This document shows, in pieces, positions 30,795 through 41,394 of a DNA stretch of 64,000 bases. The stretch's first letter is position 1, and every line of letters starts with the position of its first letter. Origin of the DNA: Selaginella moellendorffii (Eukaryota > Plantae > Lycopodiophyta); NCBI RefSeq assembly GCF_000143415.4, contig NW_003314405.1, positions 206,282-270,281 on the forward strand, read 5' to 3'. The position numbers and the translations under genes are program-made. The notes under the pieces were generated by a model. That model worked only from the letters and a program-made list of their open reading frames with translations. It was not told the origin of the DNA and ran no database searches.

Positions 30795-32333
30795 ATGACT
30801 CTTCCTGCGCTCTTGCTGCTACTCATCATTGTAAGATTTTCTTGTCTAGATGTAATTCAAGGCGTTCCAATCTACTGGGTGTCACTTGAGGCCAACACCA
30901 GCAAACTCGTCTACAAACCCACCAATGCAGGTGACACAATCATGGATTTTTCGGCCGTGGGATACTTGGGAAGGGATGCCGCACTGCCAGACAACATACC
31001 AGTGAAAGTTGCCCTCTATCCTGCTCGCAACTACAAAGGCAGCAACAAGAGCCATGGTGAATCCATCCAGCAGGCCATCAATGAGGTTTCTTCCTTGCCC
31101 CTGGATCCTTCTACAGGTTACCGTGGAGCAATCCAGCTTTCGAGTGGAGTCTTTGATGTTCGAGGCCACCGCTTTACCATCAACACCAGTGGAATTGTCA
31201 TCACCGGCAGCAGCAGCGAAGAAACAATTCTCCAGGCAAGCGTTTCCCGCGTCGACGGCGATGACAGTACCTTTCCCCACTTCTATCCTCTTTTCTCTGT
31301 GGAGAGTCCGCAAGAAAAGGTCTCGGAGATTGGCTCGAAAACCGCGATCATAGCAACAGTGCCGTCGGGATCCAGGTTCGTGCAGCTCAACTCAACTCGA
31401 GATATCAATCCTGGGGACCTCGTGAGGATCGTTTGGCCGATGAGCTCCGCGTGGATCCAGACCATGAACATGACGCACAGGTGGTCGAATGCTTCGTCAA
31501 CATACATCGAACGCAAAGTCGCCAGTATCGACAACGCGAGCAGCAGAGTCTTCCTCGACGTCCCAGTTTCTTTCCGGATCGATCTAGCGTATCTGAGCAC
31601 CGCGCAGCCGGCCTACTTGGTCAAGGTTAACATCTCCGGAAGAACAAGCCACGTTGGTCTCGAGAACTTTAAAGCAGTCCAGGACAAAGTTCTTCCGTAC
31701 GGTGCCGGGAACTTCCTCAACATCCAGCAAGTGGAGAACTCGTGGGTGAGAAACGTCGCTGCTGTGGACTTTGGAGGAGACACTGTTACTATCGCCGGCA
31801 CGAAGGTCACCGTCGACAACTTGCACCTTGAGAGGACCATCCAGAGCAACAGGTATGGCGCCAAACGAGCAGATCTCGCCATCCAATTTCCAGGCTCGCA
31901 GATCCTCGTAAAGAACAGCGTCATTCGGGGAGGAGATTTTCAGTTTAGCTACATCACCAGGAACCAGGCAAATGGTCCCAACGTGTTCTTCAACAGCACC
32001 GGCTATGGAAGCTCGCCAGCGGAACCTCACAGCCACTTTGCGACAGGGATCTTGTACGACAACATGAACTTGGTGGGTGGAACGCTGAGCCTGGTGAATC
32101 GAGCGACCATCACTCACGGCTACACATCCGGGTTTAGCGTCGCATGGAACTGTAACGCGACGGTGCTCAAGGTGATCAATCCTCCACAGGCGGCCAACTG
32201 GGCGATTGGATGCAACGCGAAATCGCTGGGAAGCATTGGAGACGAAACGCCGGGATTCATCGAGCCGGGAGGAATCGAGTCTGATCGTTTGACAAGCTTG
32301 TACCTGGCTCAAAAAAAGGTCGCAAAAATGTGA
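30795..32333 (+). CDS. Secreted pectin-lyase-like beta-helix protein, copy 1 (bacterial-like), intronless
   Basis: Signal peptide, DFSAVGY, IQQAINEV...YRGAIQLSSGVF (Pectate_lyase_3-type N-cap), NGPNVF, EPHSHFATGILYDN, PPQAANWAIG, SLYLAQ. Confidence 0.8.
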   Translation: MTLPALLLLLIIVRFSCLDVIQGVPIYWVSLEANTSKLVYKPTNAGDTIMDFSAVGYLGRDAALPDNIPVKVALYPARNYKGSNKSHGESIQQAINEVSSLPLDPSTGYRGAIQLSSGVFDVRGHRFTINTSGIVITGSSSEETILQASVSRVDGDDSTFPHFYPLFSVESPQEKVSEIGSKTAIIATVPSGSRFVQLNSTRDINPGDLVRIVWPMSSAWIQTMNMTHRWSNASSTYIERKVASIDNASSRVFLDVPVSFRIDLAYLSTAQPAYLVKVNISGRTSHVGLENFKAVQDKVLPYGAGNFLNIQQVENSWVRNVAAVDFGGDTVTIAGTKVTVDNLHLERTIQSNRYGAKRADLAIQFPGSQILVKNSVIRGGDFQFSYITRNQANGPNVFFNSTGYGSSPAEPHSHFATGILYDNMNLVGGTLSLVNRATITHGYTSGFSVAWNCNATVLKVINPPQAANWAIGCNAKSLGSIGDETPGFIEPGGIESDRLTSLYLAQKKVAKM

Positions 32334-32899
32334 GCAAAGAAAGTCAATACACGTGAAATTTGTGGATATACCCTTTGAAACTTTCAACATATGTCTAGGA
32401 TGAATAAGCAACACAAAAACGTTTCTAGAACACCTCGTTTGCATGCCGAGTTGGCAAAACCACATAAACGCCAGATAATTGGAAGCGTAAGTGATAGAAA
32501 TTTGTAGTGACAGTGTAAAAAATCAGACACGAAGTCCATATTCTTCTCAGTGCAATCTTCCTCTTCTTTGGTAACAGGAACAAGGCCAAAGTCTCATATG
32601 GGAAAATCAAGGAAGCAATGCAAATCAAGATGTGAAATTATTTACACGCGGTAGAAGGGTTTATAATTCCAGGATAGGACAATGTATCTGCGCGGCCAAA
32701 GACCGGTCAACGCATGAGATTCACGGTGTTTCCAGATATCGATTCGAATCCTCCTGAATTTGTCCTGAAAGAATGAAAATATTCTTTCTCCAACCTTTGC
32801 CATGCCGTATTAAACTCTCTTATAACATTTTGTCGTGGTTTTCCGCTATAAAATGTAGGCTGATTTTGATAGTTTAGAGCAGTATATAATCTCTCAAGC

Positions 32900-39700: not shown

Positions 39701-39876
39701 GTAAGTGAAAAGTCTTTCTCACTTGGCCTGCATTTTGTCTCGATCTTTTCATCATACATGACGTTGTCATTAGTTCCAGGCTAAAGTCCAAAGCAAGAGT
39801 GACTATATCATTTCCTGTACGAACTATGAATCAAAGAGAAAAAATCAGGGAAGCTCGAAAAGTTTTTCAAGCAAAA

Positions 39877-41394
39877 ATGGCTCTTTCTGTGCTCTTCATG
39901 ATCGCAATATTTTCTTGCCTACATGTAACTCAAGGCGTTCCAATCTACTGGGTATCTCTTGACGCCAACACCAGCAAACTCGTCTACAAACCCACCAATG
40001 CAGGTGACACGATCATGGATTTTTCGTCGGTGGGATACTTGGGAAGAGATGCCAAACTGCCAGAGGTACCAGTGAAAGTTGTCCTCTATCCTGCTCGCAA
40101 CTGTAAAGACACCAACAAGAGCGACGGTGAATCCATCCAGCATGCCATCAACGAGCTCTCCTCCTTGCCACTCGATCCCTCCACAGGTTTCCGGGGAGCA
40201 ATCCAGCTCTCAAGTGGAGATTTCGACGTTCGAGGCCACCACTTCACCATCAACACCAGTGGAATTCTCATCACCGGGAGCAGCAGTAGCGAAACCATCC
40301 TCCACGCAAATGTTTCCATAGCCGAGGATGGCATGGACGTCCACGCTTTGTTCTCAGTCGAGAGTCCACAGCAAACCATCGCAGAGGTTGGTCACAGAGC
40401 TGCTATTGTCGAGACTGTTCCCTCCGGTTCTAACTATGTGAAGCTCGACTCGTCTTGTGGATTCAAACCCGGCGATCTCGTCTCGATCGTCTGGCCGATG
40501 ACTTCCAGGTGGATCCAGATGATGAATATGAGCGAGAGATGGGGAAACTTTGCGGTTACTTCCATCGAGCGCAGAGTTTCCAGAGTTAACGGCGAAAAGA
40601 ACATGGTGTTTCTCGACATCCCGGTTCCATTTCGTGTTGATCTCAGGTACCTGAGCTCGTCACAGCCGGCTTATTTGGTCAAGGTGGAGATCTCTGGACG
40701 AGTATCCCACGTCGGTCTCGAGAACTTCAAGGCTGTCCAGGACAAAGTTCTCCCTGTCGGCCGTGGCACCTTTCTCAACATCGGTCAGGTGGAGGACTCT
40801 TGGGTGAGAAATGTCGTGGCTGTCGACTTTGGAGGCGATACCATGACTGTCACTGGAAAGAGGATCACAGTCGAGGGCTTGAATCTCATCCGGACTATTC
40901 CGGGCCCGATGAAAGGTCCAAAATTTGCTGATCTCGCCATTGCCTTTCCAGGCTCCCAGATCCTCGTCAAGAACAGCGTCATCCAAGGAGGAAGCTCCCA
41001 GTTCAGCTACATGACCCGGGACCAAGCAAATGGTCCAAATGTTTTCTTTAACAGCACCGCATATGGGAGCTCACACGCGGAGCCTCACGCTCATTTTGCA
41101 ACTGGGATCCTGTATGACAGCATGAAGTTTGAAAATGGGACAATCAGCCTGCGCAATAGGCCATACAAACATCATGGCTATACTTCTGGATTTAGTGTTG
41201 TGTGGAACTGTCACACCAAGGTGTTGGAAGTTGTGAAACCTCCACAAGCAGCAAACTGGGCCATTGGAAACACGATACAATCGCTGGGAAGCACTGGGAA
41301 TGAGACTCTAGGATTCATTGAGCCAAGAGGAATCGAGTCTCCTCGCTTGGCAAGCTTGTATCTGGCTCAAAAAGCGGCAGCAAAAATGCATTAA
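39877..41394 (+). CDS. Secreted pectin-lyase-like beta-helix protein, copy 3 (copy1/copy2 chimera)
   Basis: ATG at 39877 (MALSVLFMIAIF). N-terminus resembles copy 1, the remainder resembles copy 2. Confidence 0.8.
   Translation: MALSVLFMIAIFSCLHVTQGVPIYWVSLDANTSKLVYKPTNAGDTIMDFSSVGYLGRDAKLPEVPVKVVLYPARNCKDTNKSDGESIQHAINELSSLPLDPSTGFRGAIQLSSGDFDVRGHHFTINTSGILITGSSSSETILHANVSIAEDGMDVHALFSVESPQQTIAEVGHRAAIVETVPSGSNYVKLDSSCGFKPGDLVSIVWPMTSRWIQMMNMSERWGNFAVTSIERRVSRVNGEKNMVFLDIPVPFRVDLRYLSSSQPAYLVKVEISGRVSHVGLENFKAVQDKVLPVGRGTFLNIGQVEDSWVRNVVAVDFGGDTMTVTGKRITVEGLNLIRTIPGPMKGPKFADLAIAFPGSQILVKNSVIQGGSSQFSYMTRDQANGPNVFFNSTAYGSSHAEPHAHFATGILYDSMKFENGTISLRNRPYKHHGYTSGFSVVWNCHTKVLEVVKPPQAANWAIGNTIQSLGSTGNETLGFIEPRGIESPRLASLYLAQKAAAKMH

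What the first reader, a model, noticed from the sequence alone, without database searches (positions are those of the whole stretch)
30795..41394. Triplicated, intronless, bacterial-looking secreted beta-helix proteins: candidate horizontally acquired enzyme family
Seen: three intact ~510-aa ORFs with signal peptides and no introns, sharing DFSxVGY, IQxAIxExSSLPLD..G(F/Y)RGAIQL, NGPNVF, EPHxHFATGILYD, HGYTSGxSVxWN, PPQAANWAIG and SLYLAQ. From memory this motif order matches uncharacterised pectin-lyase-fold proteins of soil bacteria (DFSxAGY...IQxAID...GFRGAVLL...PHxRWxxGxLxDN...HGW...NWAIG...SLYxAQL), not seed-plant pectate lyase, polygalacturonase or PME families. Many N-x-S/T sequons suggest adaptation to eukaryotic secretion. 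Inference: an HGT-derived, expanding apoplastic polysaccharide lyase/hydrolase acting on the plant's own wall or on microbial glycans.
Basis: partly seen in the sequence, partly recalled or inferred. Interest (0 to 1): 0.75.

Follow-up and report, generated by a model that had tools for sequence, protein, structure and literature searches.

The report
Bacterial-type beta-helix enzymes in spikemoss
Three tandem, intronless genes in the spikemoss Selaginella moellendorffii encode secreted beta-helix proteins whose only plant relatives are in clubmosses and a whisk fern, while thousands exist in soil bacteria, so they are very probably an anciently acquired foreign sugar-degrading enzyme family of still unknown substrate.

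Summary
Three intact, intronless ORFs (A 30795-32333, B 32900-34435, C 39877-41394, + strand) encode paralogous proteins of about 510 aa with hydrophobic N-terminal leaders and all the listed motifs. They lie among seven PPR genes in genuine Selaginella moellendorffii chromatin.

- **Fold:** AlphaFold (pLDDT 92.8) gives a right-handed parallel beta-helix. No Pfam, NCBIfam or PDB family claims the proteins.
- **Distribution:** an exhaustive profile search of 1.84 billion representatives finds plant members only in Selaginella, Diphasiastrum and Psilotum, against about 3,900 mostly bacterial relatives.
- **Phylogeny:** the plant sequences form one clade (100/100) inside that radiation.
- **Activity:** copy A is transcribed, unspliced and polyadenylated; copy B was silent in the runs read and copy C was not tested. 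dN/dS is 0.19-0.30.
- **Bacterial context:** homologs sit beside GH28-like, GH29, GH88 and PL6-like genes, which suggests depolymerisation of an acidic, fucose-containing glycan.

The HGT reading is supported, with three corrections:
- The transfer is ancient and is shared with a fern.
- The donor is unresolved.
- A neighbouring clade sits on giant-virus-like contigs, so a viral route cannot be excluded (AU p 0.31).

Substrate and mechanism remain inferred. No paper in the library names these genes. The scan held no earlier tested report on this stretch.

The parts
30795..32333 (+). Copy A: intronless CDS, 512 aa, secreted beta-helix protein; inferred signal peptide 30795-30863; 10 N-x-S/T sequons
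   Evidence: ORF. Covered continuously by stranded RNA-seq reads with no joints. dN/dS 0.19-0.21 against B and C. The exact protein is not in the 15-billion-protein collection, so it is unannotated.
32334..32366 (+). Short 3' UTR of copy A ending at a poly(A) addition site
   Evidence: An assembled transcript contig (run X1) spans 30908-32366 and continues into an A-run followed by sequencing adapter (tables 7 and 8).
32900..34435 (+). Copy B: intronless CDS, 511 aa; inferred signal peptide 32900-32950; 3 sequons; used for the structure model
   Evidence: ORF. AF2 model with pLDDT 92.8 and pTM 0.92. Essentially no RNA reads in the four runs laid. dN/dS 0.30 against C. Not in the public protein collection.
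34436..39798 (.). AT-rich spacer (34% GC) separating copies B and C; no ORF of 104 aa or more, no internal repeats
39877..41394 (+). Copy C: intronless CDS, 505 aa from the Met at 39877 (the ORF is open from a GTG at 39799); inferred signal peptide 39877-39936; 8 sequons; equals SELMODRAFT_431084 / 419717
   Evidence: ORF. 100% identical to P0119 over residues 46-531 and 99.2% identical to P0001.
28266..30083 (+). Upstream flanking PPR gene (context: genuine plant nuclear DNA)
   Evidence: Pfam PPR E 1.6e-59.
41474..43090 (+). Downstream flanking PPR gene with E motif (context)
   Evidence: Pfam PPR E 2.2e-57.

Best explanation
The three genes are a tandemly expanded, functional family of secreted, probably N-glycosylated, right-handed beta-helix carbohydrate-active proteins in Selaginella moellendorffii. 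The family entered the vascular-plant lineage once by horizontal transfer from a bacterium, or through a virus carrying the bacterial-type gene, before lycophytes and ferns diverged. It was kept in Selaginella, Diphasiastrum and Psilotum and lost or never fixed elsewhere. It then duplicated locally in Selaginella (A versus B/C long ago at dS about 1; B versus C later at dS 0.35). Shown: fold, distribution, monophyly, genomic integration, transcription with polyadenylation of copy A, and purifying selection. Inferred: the proteins are apoplastic endo-acting glycan depolymerases (hydrolase or lyase not decided). They use the conserved polar set D46/H402/D412/R426 (copy B numbering) and act on an acidic, possibly fucose- and uronic-acid-containing polysaccharide. 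Specificity has shifted from the bacterial enzymes because several bacterial near-invariant residues (R131, R404, W405, W433) are replaced in plants.
For: Fold:
- AF2 pLDDT 92.8.
- VIA-align Z 20-26 over residues 64-483 to beta-helix CAZymes and phage depolymerases; Foldseek agrees.
- The N-terminal cap motif matches 7chu and AlgE at profile level.

Distribution:
- Plant hits are only Selaginella, Diphasiastrum and Psilotum.
- In the exhaustive profile search the plants score 569-893 bits. The next two hits (471 and 401 bits) are two-domain proteins on bacterial contigs, and everything else scores 326 bits or less.
- 366 loci are confirmed in bacterial species genomes at 30-35% identity.

Phylogeny:
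- The plant clade has 100/100 support. Plants plus a 35-sequence bacterial/viral clade have 100/96 support, with further bacteria outside.
- Lycophyte monophyly is not rejected (p 0.23).

Host integration: seven PPR genes, Ty3 gag, TAXi and GDSL genes surround the locus. GC3 lies within the range of the neighbouring PPR genes.

Activity:
- Copy A has stranded, unspliced RNA coverage and a poly(A) end.
- dN/dS is 0.19-0.30.
- Family-invariant residues are retained.

Function:
- Bacterial homologs are fused to CBM32, CBM6, BACON, T9SS or GH88 modules.
- Of 80 bacterial loci, 22 have a GH28-like neighbour, 22 GH29, 12 GH88 and 10 a PL6-like gene.
Against: - No member of the family, bacterial or plant, is biochemically characterised, and no catalytic residue is mapped. 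I could not read the model's coordinates.
- Copy B showed almost no RNA in the runs read, and copy C was not tested.
- The tree is unrooted, so 'nested in bacteria' rests on taxon distribution rather than topology alone.
- The sister of the plant clade is unresolved (84/79 support).
- The Psilotum member is a single transcriptome contig and could be a contaminant.
- Plant substitutions at bacterial near-invariant positions could mean loss of activity rather than changed specificity.
- The main published HGT catalogue for land plants (Ma et al. 2022) was not in the library, so prior listing cannot be excluded.
Confidence: 0.68

Rival explanations
1. Giant-virus route: the gene reached the early vascular-plant genome from an infecting or endogenised nucleocytoplasmic large DNA virus that used the enzyme to digest host walls. 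It did not come directly from a bacterium.
For: - The clade P0264/P0267/P0271 lies next to the plant clade.
- It sits on contigs of 26-30% GC that encode ubiquitin, AP2-HNH, dUTPase, Erv1/Alr, SNF2-type helicases, PL14 and CBM2-PL7 lyases and many ORFans.
- The helicase's relatives are metagenomic. The only informative names are 'viral metagenome', contigs reach 327 kb, and some carry inteins.
- Forcing plants plus this clade together costs only 2.8 lnL units (AU p 0.31).
- NCLDV-derived genes are documented in S. moellendorffii (PMC4083422).
Against: - The best tree does not join plants with the viral clade.
- No NCLDV hallmark gene (capsid, polB, A32) was seen on the short loci read.
- The IMG/VR scan found no relative.
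- No virus-like genes neighbour the plant copies.
- Maumus et al. did not flag this family.
- The viral clade itself is nested among bacterial sequences, so the ultimate origin is still bacterial.
Confidence: 0.15
2. Non-catalytic derivative: the plant proteins kept the beta-helix scaffold but work as secreted glycan-binding or inhibitor-type proteins (lectin, adhesin or decoy) rather than as enzymes.
For: - Plants replace several bacterial near-invariant residues (R131, R404 to H, W405 to F, W433 to Y/I/F) and shorten the GSGHGW loop.
- Beta-helix adhesins such as PfbA and Vag8 are among the structural matches.
Against: - All family-invariant polar residues (D46, H402, D412, plus R104, R230, R426, N458) are retained in all plant members.
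- Purifying selection is strong.
Confidence: 0.12
3. Vertical inheritance: an ancient eukaryotic or plant gene lost independently in algae, bryophytes, most ferns and all seed plants.
For: - The tree is unrooted, so the root could lie on the long plant stem (0.77 substitutions per site).
- Scattered eukaryotic relatives exist: a Mortierellomycota protein, a Protostelium transcript and an Ascomycota cluster.
Against: - The exhaustive search finds no other plant or algal member.
- The other eukaryotic sequences do not group with plants but fall separately among bacteria.
- Genes are intronless in an intron-rich genome.
- This reading requires many independent losses.
Confidence: 0.04
4. Bacterial contamination or misassembly of the plant genome.
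For: Best non-plant hits are bacterial.
Against: - Genes are flanked within a few hundred bases by PPR genes on both sides.
- The mRNA is polyadenylated.
- Two haplotype alleles are annotated in the public genome.
- Identity to any bacterium is only about 35%.
- Orthologs exist in two other plant genera.
Confidence: 0.01

Closest known systems
Uncharacterised bacterial beta-helix family (relatives partly hit by Pfam PF12708 Pect-lyase_RHGA_epim plus PF16315 DUF4955), e.g. Niastella, Niabella, Chitinophaga, Mucilaginibacter, Paenibacillus and Ralstonia solanacearum 'hypothetical proteins'
   Same: Full-length homology at 30-35% identity over more than 90% of the protein. Same motif order (DFSxxGY, IQxAI, GFRGA, GPNV, PHx(R/H)(W/F)xTGxLxD, HG(W/Y), NWAIG, SLYLAQ). 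Predicted structures superpose at TM 0.85-0.87.
   Different: Plant proteins lack the CBM32, CBM6, BACON, T9SS and GH88 accessory modules. They carry eukaryotic-type signal peptides and in some copies more sequons, and they replace R131, R404, W405 and W433. No member has a known activity.
Phage tailspike / capsule depolymerases and Geobacillus virus E2 ORF18 (PDB 7chu, 4y9v, 4ru4, 7w1c)
   Same: Right-handed beta-helix with the same N-terminal cap motif. Best structural matches (7chu Z 26.4; Foldseek E 4e-10), consistent with exopolysaccharide depolymerase activity.
   Different: Only 10-16% identity. TM-scores are 0.35-0.43. The plant proteins have no trimerisation or particle-binding domains. 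Catalytic residues could not be compared.
GH28 polygalacturonases / rhamnogalacturonases (e.g. 1bhe, 8ikx Arabidopsis PGLR)
   Same: Same fold (Z 20-25). A GH28-like gene is the commonest neighbour of the bacterial homologs.
   Different: No Pfam GH28 hit. This is a different family from the plant's own vertically inherited polygalacturonases.
AlgE-type mannuronan C5-epimerases / alginate epimerase-lyases and PL6/PL31 lyases (2pyg, 8ja4, 6kfn)
   Same: Fold (Z 22-25), profile-level match of the cap region, and a conserved Pro-His motif reminiscent (from memory) of the AlgE DPHE catalytic motif. GH88 and PL6-like neighbours point to uronic-acid substrates.
   Different: The sequence match is limited to about 65 N-terminal residues. 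The residue before Pro-His is E or Q, not D. No Ca-site or catalytic alignment could be made.
Known bacteria-to-early-plant transfers of wall-active and other genes, and NCLDV-derived genes in Selaginella and Physcomitrium (PMC4083422)
   Same: Intronless, patchily distributed, expressed, under purifying selection, and present in seed-free plants.
   Different: This family is not among the Selaginella genes named there (EFJ10148, EFJ26844), and none of its gene identifiers occurs in the searchable literature.

Membership tests
Right-handed parallel beta-helix (pectin-lyase-fold) superfamily | Single-stranded right-handed beta-helix of stacked coils with an N-terminal capping helix | tested here: met
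   AF2 pLDDT 92.8. VIA-align Z 18-26 to more than 50 beta-helix entries over residues about 64-483. Cap motif matched to 7chu at E 5e-9.
Pfam PF12708 (Pect-lyase_RHGA_epim) / PF16315 (DUF4955) architecture | Score above the Pfam gathering threshold | tested here: not met
   The window proteins give no hit even at E 1. 17 of 87 relatives hit PF12708 and 30 of 87 hit DUF4955, mostly weakly. This is a divergent sister group rather than a member.
GH28 polygalacturonase | Pfam PF00295 match with conserved NTD / DD / GHG / RIK catalytic strands | tested here: not met
   No PF00295 hit. Only an HG motif is shared. A residue-level structural alignment was not available.
Seed-plant pectate lyase (PL1, PF00544) and pectin methylesterase (PF01095) | Pfam match | tested here: not met
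   No hits for the window proteins. One of 87 relatives gives a marginal Pectinesterase hit.
Horizontally transferred gene in a plant nuclear genome | Physically integrated among host genes | tested here: met
   PPR genes lie within 0.1-0.7 kb on both sides. Seven PPR, Ty3 gag, TAXi and GDSL genes are in the window.
Horizontally transferred gene in a plant nuclear genome | Patchy recipient distribution with abundant donor-domain homologs | tested here: met
   Only Selaginella, Diphasiastrum and Psilotum among plants, against about 3,900 representatives, mostly prokaryotic.
Horizontally transferred gene in a plant nuclear genome | Recipient sequences form a clade nested within donor diversity | tested here: met
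   Plants have 100/100 support, inside a 100/96 group with bacterial sequences on both sides. The root is not inferred and the donor is unresolved.
Horizontally transferred gene in a plant nuclear genome | Expressed and under selection in the recipient | tested here: met
   Copy A is polyadenylated, unspliced, + strand RNA. dN/dS is 0.19-0.30. B was silent in the runs read and C was untested.
Carbohydrate-active enzyme (glycoside hydrolase or polysaccharide lyase) | Demonstrated catalytic activity or alignment of catalytic residues to a characterised family | not testable with these tools
   Only indirect support: CBM/GH88 fusions and CAZyme neighbourhoods of bacterial homologs and conserved D/H/R residues.

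The most novel reading that the evidence does not exclude
An uncharacterised beta-helix glycan depolymerase family is shared by soil bacteria, giant viruses and seed-free vascular plants. The plant genes would be relics of a giant-virus infection or endogenisation of an early tracheophyte (about 400 million years ago or more). They would have been domesticated as secreted wall- or biofilm-modifying enzymes and would define a new CAZy family with a catalytic centre built from an N-terminal DFS strand plus a Pro-His...Asp motif.
Probability: 0.12. Interest if true: 0.8.

Novelty: new member of a known kind. Interest (0 to 1): 0.55.

Why it matters
Horizontal acquisition of microbial wall-active enzymes is thought to have helped early land plants, but few cases are documented for lycophytes and ferns. 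This locus adds several things:
- A clean case of an expressed, selected and tandemly expanding gene family.
- Two paralogs (A and B) that are missing from the public Selaginella protein set.
- A family that has no biochemical characterisation in any organism, although it has thousands of members in soil Bacteroidota, Acidobacteriota, Planctomycetota and Verrucomicrobiota, in the plant pathogen Ralstonia solanacearum, and apparently in giant viruses.

Characterising one plant and one bacterial member could define a new carbohydrate-active enzyme family. It could also show whether seed-free vascular plants use it on their own walls or against microbial exopolysaccharides.

Tried and rejected
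- **Family and sequence scans:** Pfam, NCBIfam, PADLOC and single-sequence PDB searches of the window proteins gave nothing.
- **Literature:** searches for the gene identifiers, DUF4955, DUF6298, PF16315 and PF19815 gave nothing. Searches on Selaginella, HGT and pectate lyase gave no relevant paper. The Lycopodium genome preprint mentions HGT only in a decontamination context. Ma et al. 2022 is cited by others but is not held in the library.
- **P0233 and P0234:** I first took these high-scoring hits as possible further plant members. Their contigs are bacterial, and the scores reflect two tandem domains.
- **Uninformative neighbourhoods:** Paenibacillus, Mucilaginibacter mali and Chitinophaga niabensis. 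P0124 was not on record.
- **Collection scans:** the IMG/VR scan with the virus-like clade found no relative.
- **Other dead ends:** the Atlas feature search of a large L012 ORF gave no hit. The B-C spacer has no repeats or sizeable ORFs, so I could not name a transposon there.
- **Rejected outright:** contamination and a seed-plant-type pectinase identity.
- **Not possible:** I could not map catalytic residues, because model coordinates and residue-level structural alignments are not exposed by the tools.
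Full report
**Observation**

The window contains three uninterrupted + strand ORFs at 30795-32333 (A, 512 aa), 32900-34435 (B, 511 aa) and 39799-41394 (C). C opens at a GTG; its likely start is the Met at 39877, giving 505 aa. tblastn with B finds exactly these three copies and no fragments. Protein identity is 82% for B-C and about 69-71% for A against either. 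DNA similarity (88.6% for B-C, about 75% for A) is limited essentially to the coding regions. B and C are separated by a 5.4 kb spacer of 34% GC without sizeable ORFs or repeats. Each protein starts with a hydrophobic leader followed by the conserved mature N-terminus. The signal peptides are inferred, since no predictor was available.

**Where the window comes from**

Copy C is 100% identical over its mature part to SELMODRAFT_431084 and 99.2% identical to SELMODRAFT_419717, the two haplotype alleles of Selaginella moellendorffii. The 431084 gene model carries a PPR-like N-terminus, which is evidently a mis-fusion with a neighbouring gene. Copies A and B are not present, even as 90% clusters, in the 15-billion-protein collection, so they are unannotated. 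The window is ordinary plant chromatin: seven PPR genes (two of them directly flank the cluster), a Ty3-type gag, an ankyrin-PGG gene, a TAXi-type aspartyl protease and two GDSL lipases. GC3 of the three genes (0.56-0.63) lies between that of the two flanking PPR genes. Contamination is excluded.

**Fold and family**

Pfam, NCBIfam and PDB sequence searches give no hit for the window proteins. A profile of 87 homologs matches PDB entries only over the N-terminal cap motif: 7chu at E 5e-9, with AlgE epimerases and tailspikes weaker.

AlphaFold2 on that alignment gives a confident model (pLDDT 92.8, pTM 0.92) that is almost all beta-strand. Foldseek and VIA-align place it firmly in the right-handed parallel beta-helix fold:
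- 7chu at Z 26.4
- an alginate epimerase/lyase at Z 24.8
- Erwinia polygalacturonase at Z 24.6
- a K1 capsule lyase at Z 24.2
- many phage depolymerases, GH28, PL1, PL6, PL9, GH82, GH110 and GH141 entries

No single family stands above the rest, and Foldseek TM-scores are only 0.35-0.43. In the ESM Atlas the close structural neighbours (TM 0.85-0.87) are uncharacterised bacterial clusters, some carrying BACON, CBM32 or T9SS modules. Among the 87 homologs, 30 weakly hit DUF4955 (this covers the C-terminal third of the domain) and 17 weakly hit PF12708. The family is therefore a divergent, unnamed branch of the pectin-lyase-fold superfamily. It is not GH28, PL1 or pectinesterase.

**Distribution**

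The word-based search with B returned these eukaryotic hits:
- Selaginella (two loci, each with two alleles)
- Diphasiastrum complanatum
- an EukProt transcript that the cluster look-up identifies as Psilotum nudum
- one partial Mortierellomycota protein

A further roughly 110 hits were bacterial or metagenomic proteins at 25-36% identity. A plant-only profile added a second Diphasiastrum paralog and nothing else from plants.

Because the claim rests on absence, I ran the exhaustive hmmsearch with the plant profile against 1.84 billion representatives. It gave 3,923 hits. The plant members score 569-893 bits. The next two hits (471 and 401 bits) proved to be two-domain proteins on contigs with bacterial operons, and all others score 326 bits or less. 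No bryophyte, alga, seed plant or other fern appears.

In species-representative prokaryotic genomes, 366 loci were confirmed. They lie mostly in Chitinophagaceae, Sphingobacteriaceae, Acidobacteriota, Planctomycetota, Verrucomicrobiota, Abditibacteriaceae, Chromobacterium and Paenibacillus. One representative stands for a protein conserved across the Ralstonia solanacearum species complex, and another is a Protostelium (Amoebozoa) transcript.

**Phylogeny**

A 94-sequence tree and a careful 50-sequence tree (IQ-TREE, LG+C20 PMSF) both recover all seven plant sequences as one clade (SH-aLRT 100; UFBoot/SH-aLRT 100/100) on a stem of 0.73-0.77. This clade sits inside a 100/96 group together with 35 bacterial or virus-like sequences, with other bacterial clades outside. 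The sister of the plant clade is not resolved (84/79).

The fungal and amoebozoan sequences fall elsewhere among the bacteria, so they are separate events or contaminants. Within plants, Psilotum groups with the window's A/B/C clade (100/98). The second Selaginella locus and the two Diphasiastrum genes are basal. An AU test does not reject lycophyte monophyly (p 0.23).

The simplest history is one acquisition at or before the lycophyte-euphyllophyte split, followed by loss in seed plants and in the ferns on record. The root is not inferred, so 'nested' depends on the taxon distribution, which is strongly one-sided.

**An unexpected neighbour clade**

Two members of the clade adjacent to the plants (P0267 and P0264) lie on contigs that are not bacterial in character:
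- GC content is 26-30%.
- They encode ubiquitin, an AP2-HNH endonuclease, dUTPase, Erv1/Alr sulfhydryl oxidase and SNF2-type helicases.
- They carry a PL14 lyase and a CBM2-PL7 lyase.
- Many of their ORFs have no family assignment.

The helicase's relatives are all metagenomic. The only informative names are 'viral metagenome', contigs reach 327 kb, and some relatives carry inteins. These are most likely giant-virus contigs in which the beta-helix gene accompanies other wall-degrading enzymes.

Constraining plants plus this clade to be one group costs 2.8 log-likelihood units (AU p 0.31), so a virus-mediated route is neither supported nor excluded. Giant-virus-derived genes have been reported in S. 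moellendorffii, but not this family (PMC4083422). An IMG/VR scan found no further viral relative.

**Evidence of function in the plant**

Stranded RNA-seq reads from two 2026 runs cover copy A continuously from about 30771 to 32340. The first mates lie almost all on the minus strand, which indicates + strand RNA under the usual library convention, and there are no splice joints. An assembled transcript from an older run ends at 32366, 33 nt after the stop codon, in an A-run followed by adapter, which marks a poly(A) tail.

Copy B had almost no reads in these runs. The few it had carry 4-5 mismatches and probably come from a paralog or allele.

Pairwise dN/dS is 0.19 (A-B), 0.21 (A-C) and 0.30 (B-C), with dS of 1.14, 0.91 and 0.35. 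This means old duplications under purifying selection. Sequon counts are 10, 3 and 8 for A, B and C, against a bacterial median of 4 per 500 aa. Enrichment is real for some copies but is not a general feature.

**What it probably does**

No member is characterised, and the literature searches were empty. Indirect evidence comes from the bacterial relatives.

Many are fused to CBM32/discoidin, CBM6/35, BACON or T9SS sorting domains, and one is fused to a GH88 domain.

In an unbiased clustering of ORFs within 6 kb of 80 bacterial loci, these neighbour families recur:

| Neighbour family | Loci (of 80) |
|---|---|
| GH28-like beta-helix | 22 |
| GH29 alpha-L-fucosidase | 22 |
| GH88 | 12 |
| PL6-like lyase | 10 |
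| GFO/IDH/MocA oxidoreductase | 7 |
| alpha-galactosidase | 7 |
| SASA esterase | 5 |
| GH3 | 5 |
| PF14099 lyase | 5 |

SusC/SusD with ECF sigma/anti-sigma pairs lie nearby in the loci examined. GH95 and a GH31-alginate-lyase fusion lie beside the GH88 fusion protein. This is the signature of loci that degrade an acidic, fucose- and uronic-acid-containing polysaccharide. Candidate substrates, from general knowledge, are bacterial exopolysaccharides of the colanic-acid type, pectic side chains, arabinogalactan-proteins or fucoidan-like glycans.

The plant proteins retain every family-invariant polar residue (D46, H402, D412) and the near-invariant S48, Y52, Q86, R104, R230, D245, R426 and N458. 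They replace R131, R404 (to H), W405 (to F) and W433 (to Y/I/F), and they shorten the GSGHGW loop.

I therefore infer an active, secreted endo-depolymerase with altered substrate preference. Whether it is a hydrolase or a lyase is open. The GH88 association leans towards lyase. The resemblance to GH28 and the absence of an obvious Ca/Arg signature lean towards hydrolase. I put it at about even.

**Comparison, novelty and verdict**

The locus works like other bacterial CAZyme genes domesticated by early land plants, and it meets all the usual HGT criteria tested here. It is not a member of any named CAZy or Pfam family that I could test. I file it as a new member of a known kind of event (microbe-to-plant HGT of a wall-active enzyme).

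- The transfer is shared with clubmosses and a whisk fern, so it is ancient.
- Two of the three copies are unannotated, and one of those (A) is clearly expressed.
- The family also occurs on giant-virus-like contigs adjacent to the plant clade.

Limits of this report:
- Substrate and mechanism are inferred.
- The Psilotum member is one transcript.
- The published land-plant HGT catalogue could not be consulted.

Noticed in passing
L011 (8001-9671 and neighbours) and L012 (8001-9554 and neighbours): Homologs P0267 and P0264 sit on contigs of 26-30% GC with ubiquitin, AP2-HNH, dUTPase, Erv1/Alr, SNF2-type helicases, a PL14 lyase, a CBM2-PL7 lyase and many ORFans. These are probably giant-virus contigs carrying a battery of wall-degrading enzymes.
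   Followed up: partly
P0244 cluster: A 580-aa member of the family is conserved across the Ralstonia solanacearum species complex. It is annotated only as hypothetical, hemagglutinin-related or pectate lyase superfamily protein, and its role in that plant pathogen is unknown.
   Followed up: no
P0111 (Lunasporangiospora), P0268 (Protostelium nocturnum), Atlas Ascomycota cluster: Other eukaryotes carry relatives that do not group with the plant clade. These are possibly independent transfers or transcriptome contaminants.
   Followed up: partly
window 39799-39876 and protein P0119: The public gene model SELMODRAFT_431084 has a PPR-like N-terminus instead of the signal peptide encoded at 39877. 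It looks like a mis-fused annotation.
   Followed up: partly
window 2178-5123, 26443-27945, 28266-30083, 41474-43090, 43087-45051, 47992-50832, 50862-52901: Seven intronless PPR genes lie in 64 kb, a dense PPR cluster surrounding the beta-helix genes.
   Followed up: partly
window 29943-30087 and 30130-30282: An approximately 150-bp direct repeat (88% identity) lies at and just after the 3' end of the upstream PPR gene. The adjoining stretch 30300-30456 is transcribed.
   Followed up: no
window 33754-33920: A few RNA reads from one run map to copy B with 4-5 mismatches each. They probably come from an allele or paralog rather than from B itself.
   Followed up: no
window 34853-35000: RNA-seq coverage and an assembled contig start here in the otherwise ORF-free AT-rich spacer, with first mates on the + strand (opposite in orientation to the copy A reads). 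This is an unannotated transcript.
   Followed up: no
window 53523-54482 and 62646-63614: Two paralogous GDSL lipase ORFs on the minus strand, each about 320 aa.
   Followed up: no
window 14116-15549: A Ty3-type retrotransposon gag ORF (minus strand), matching the LTR element noted by the scan at 13117-13633.
   Followed up: no
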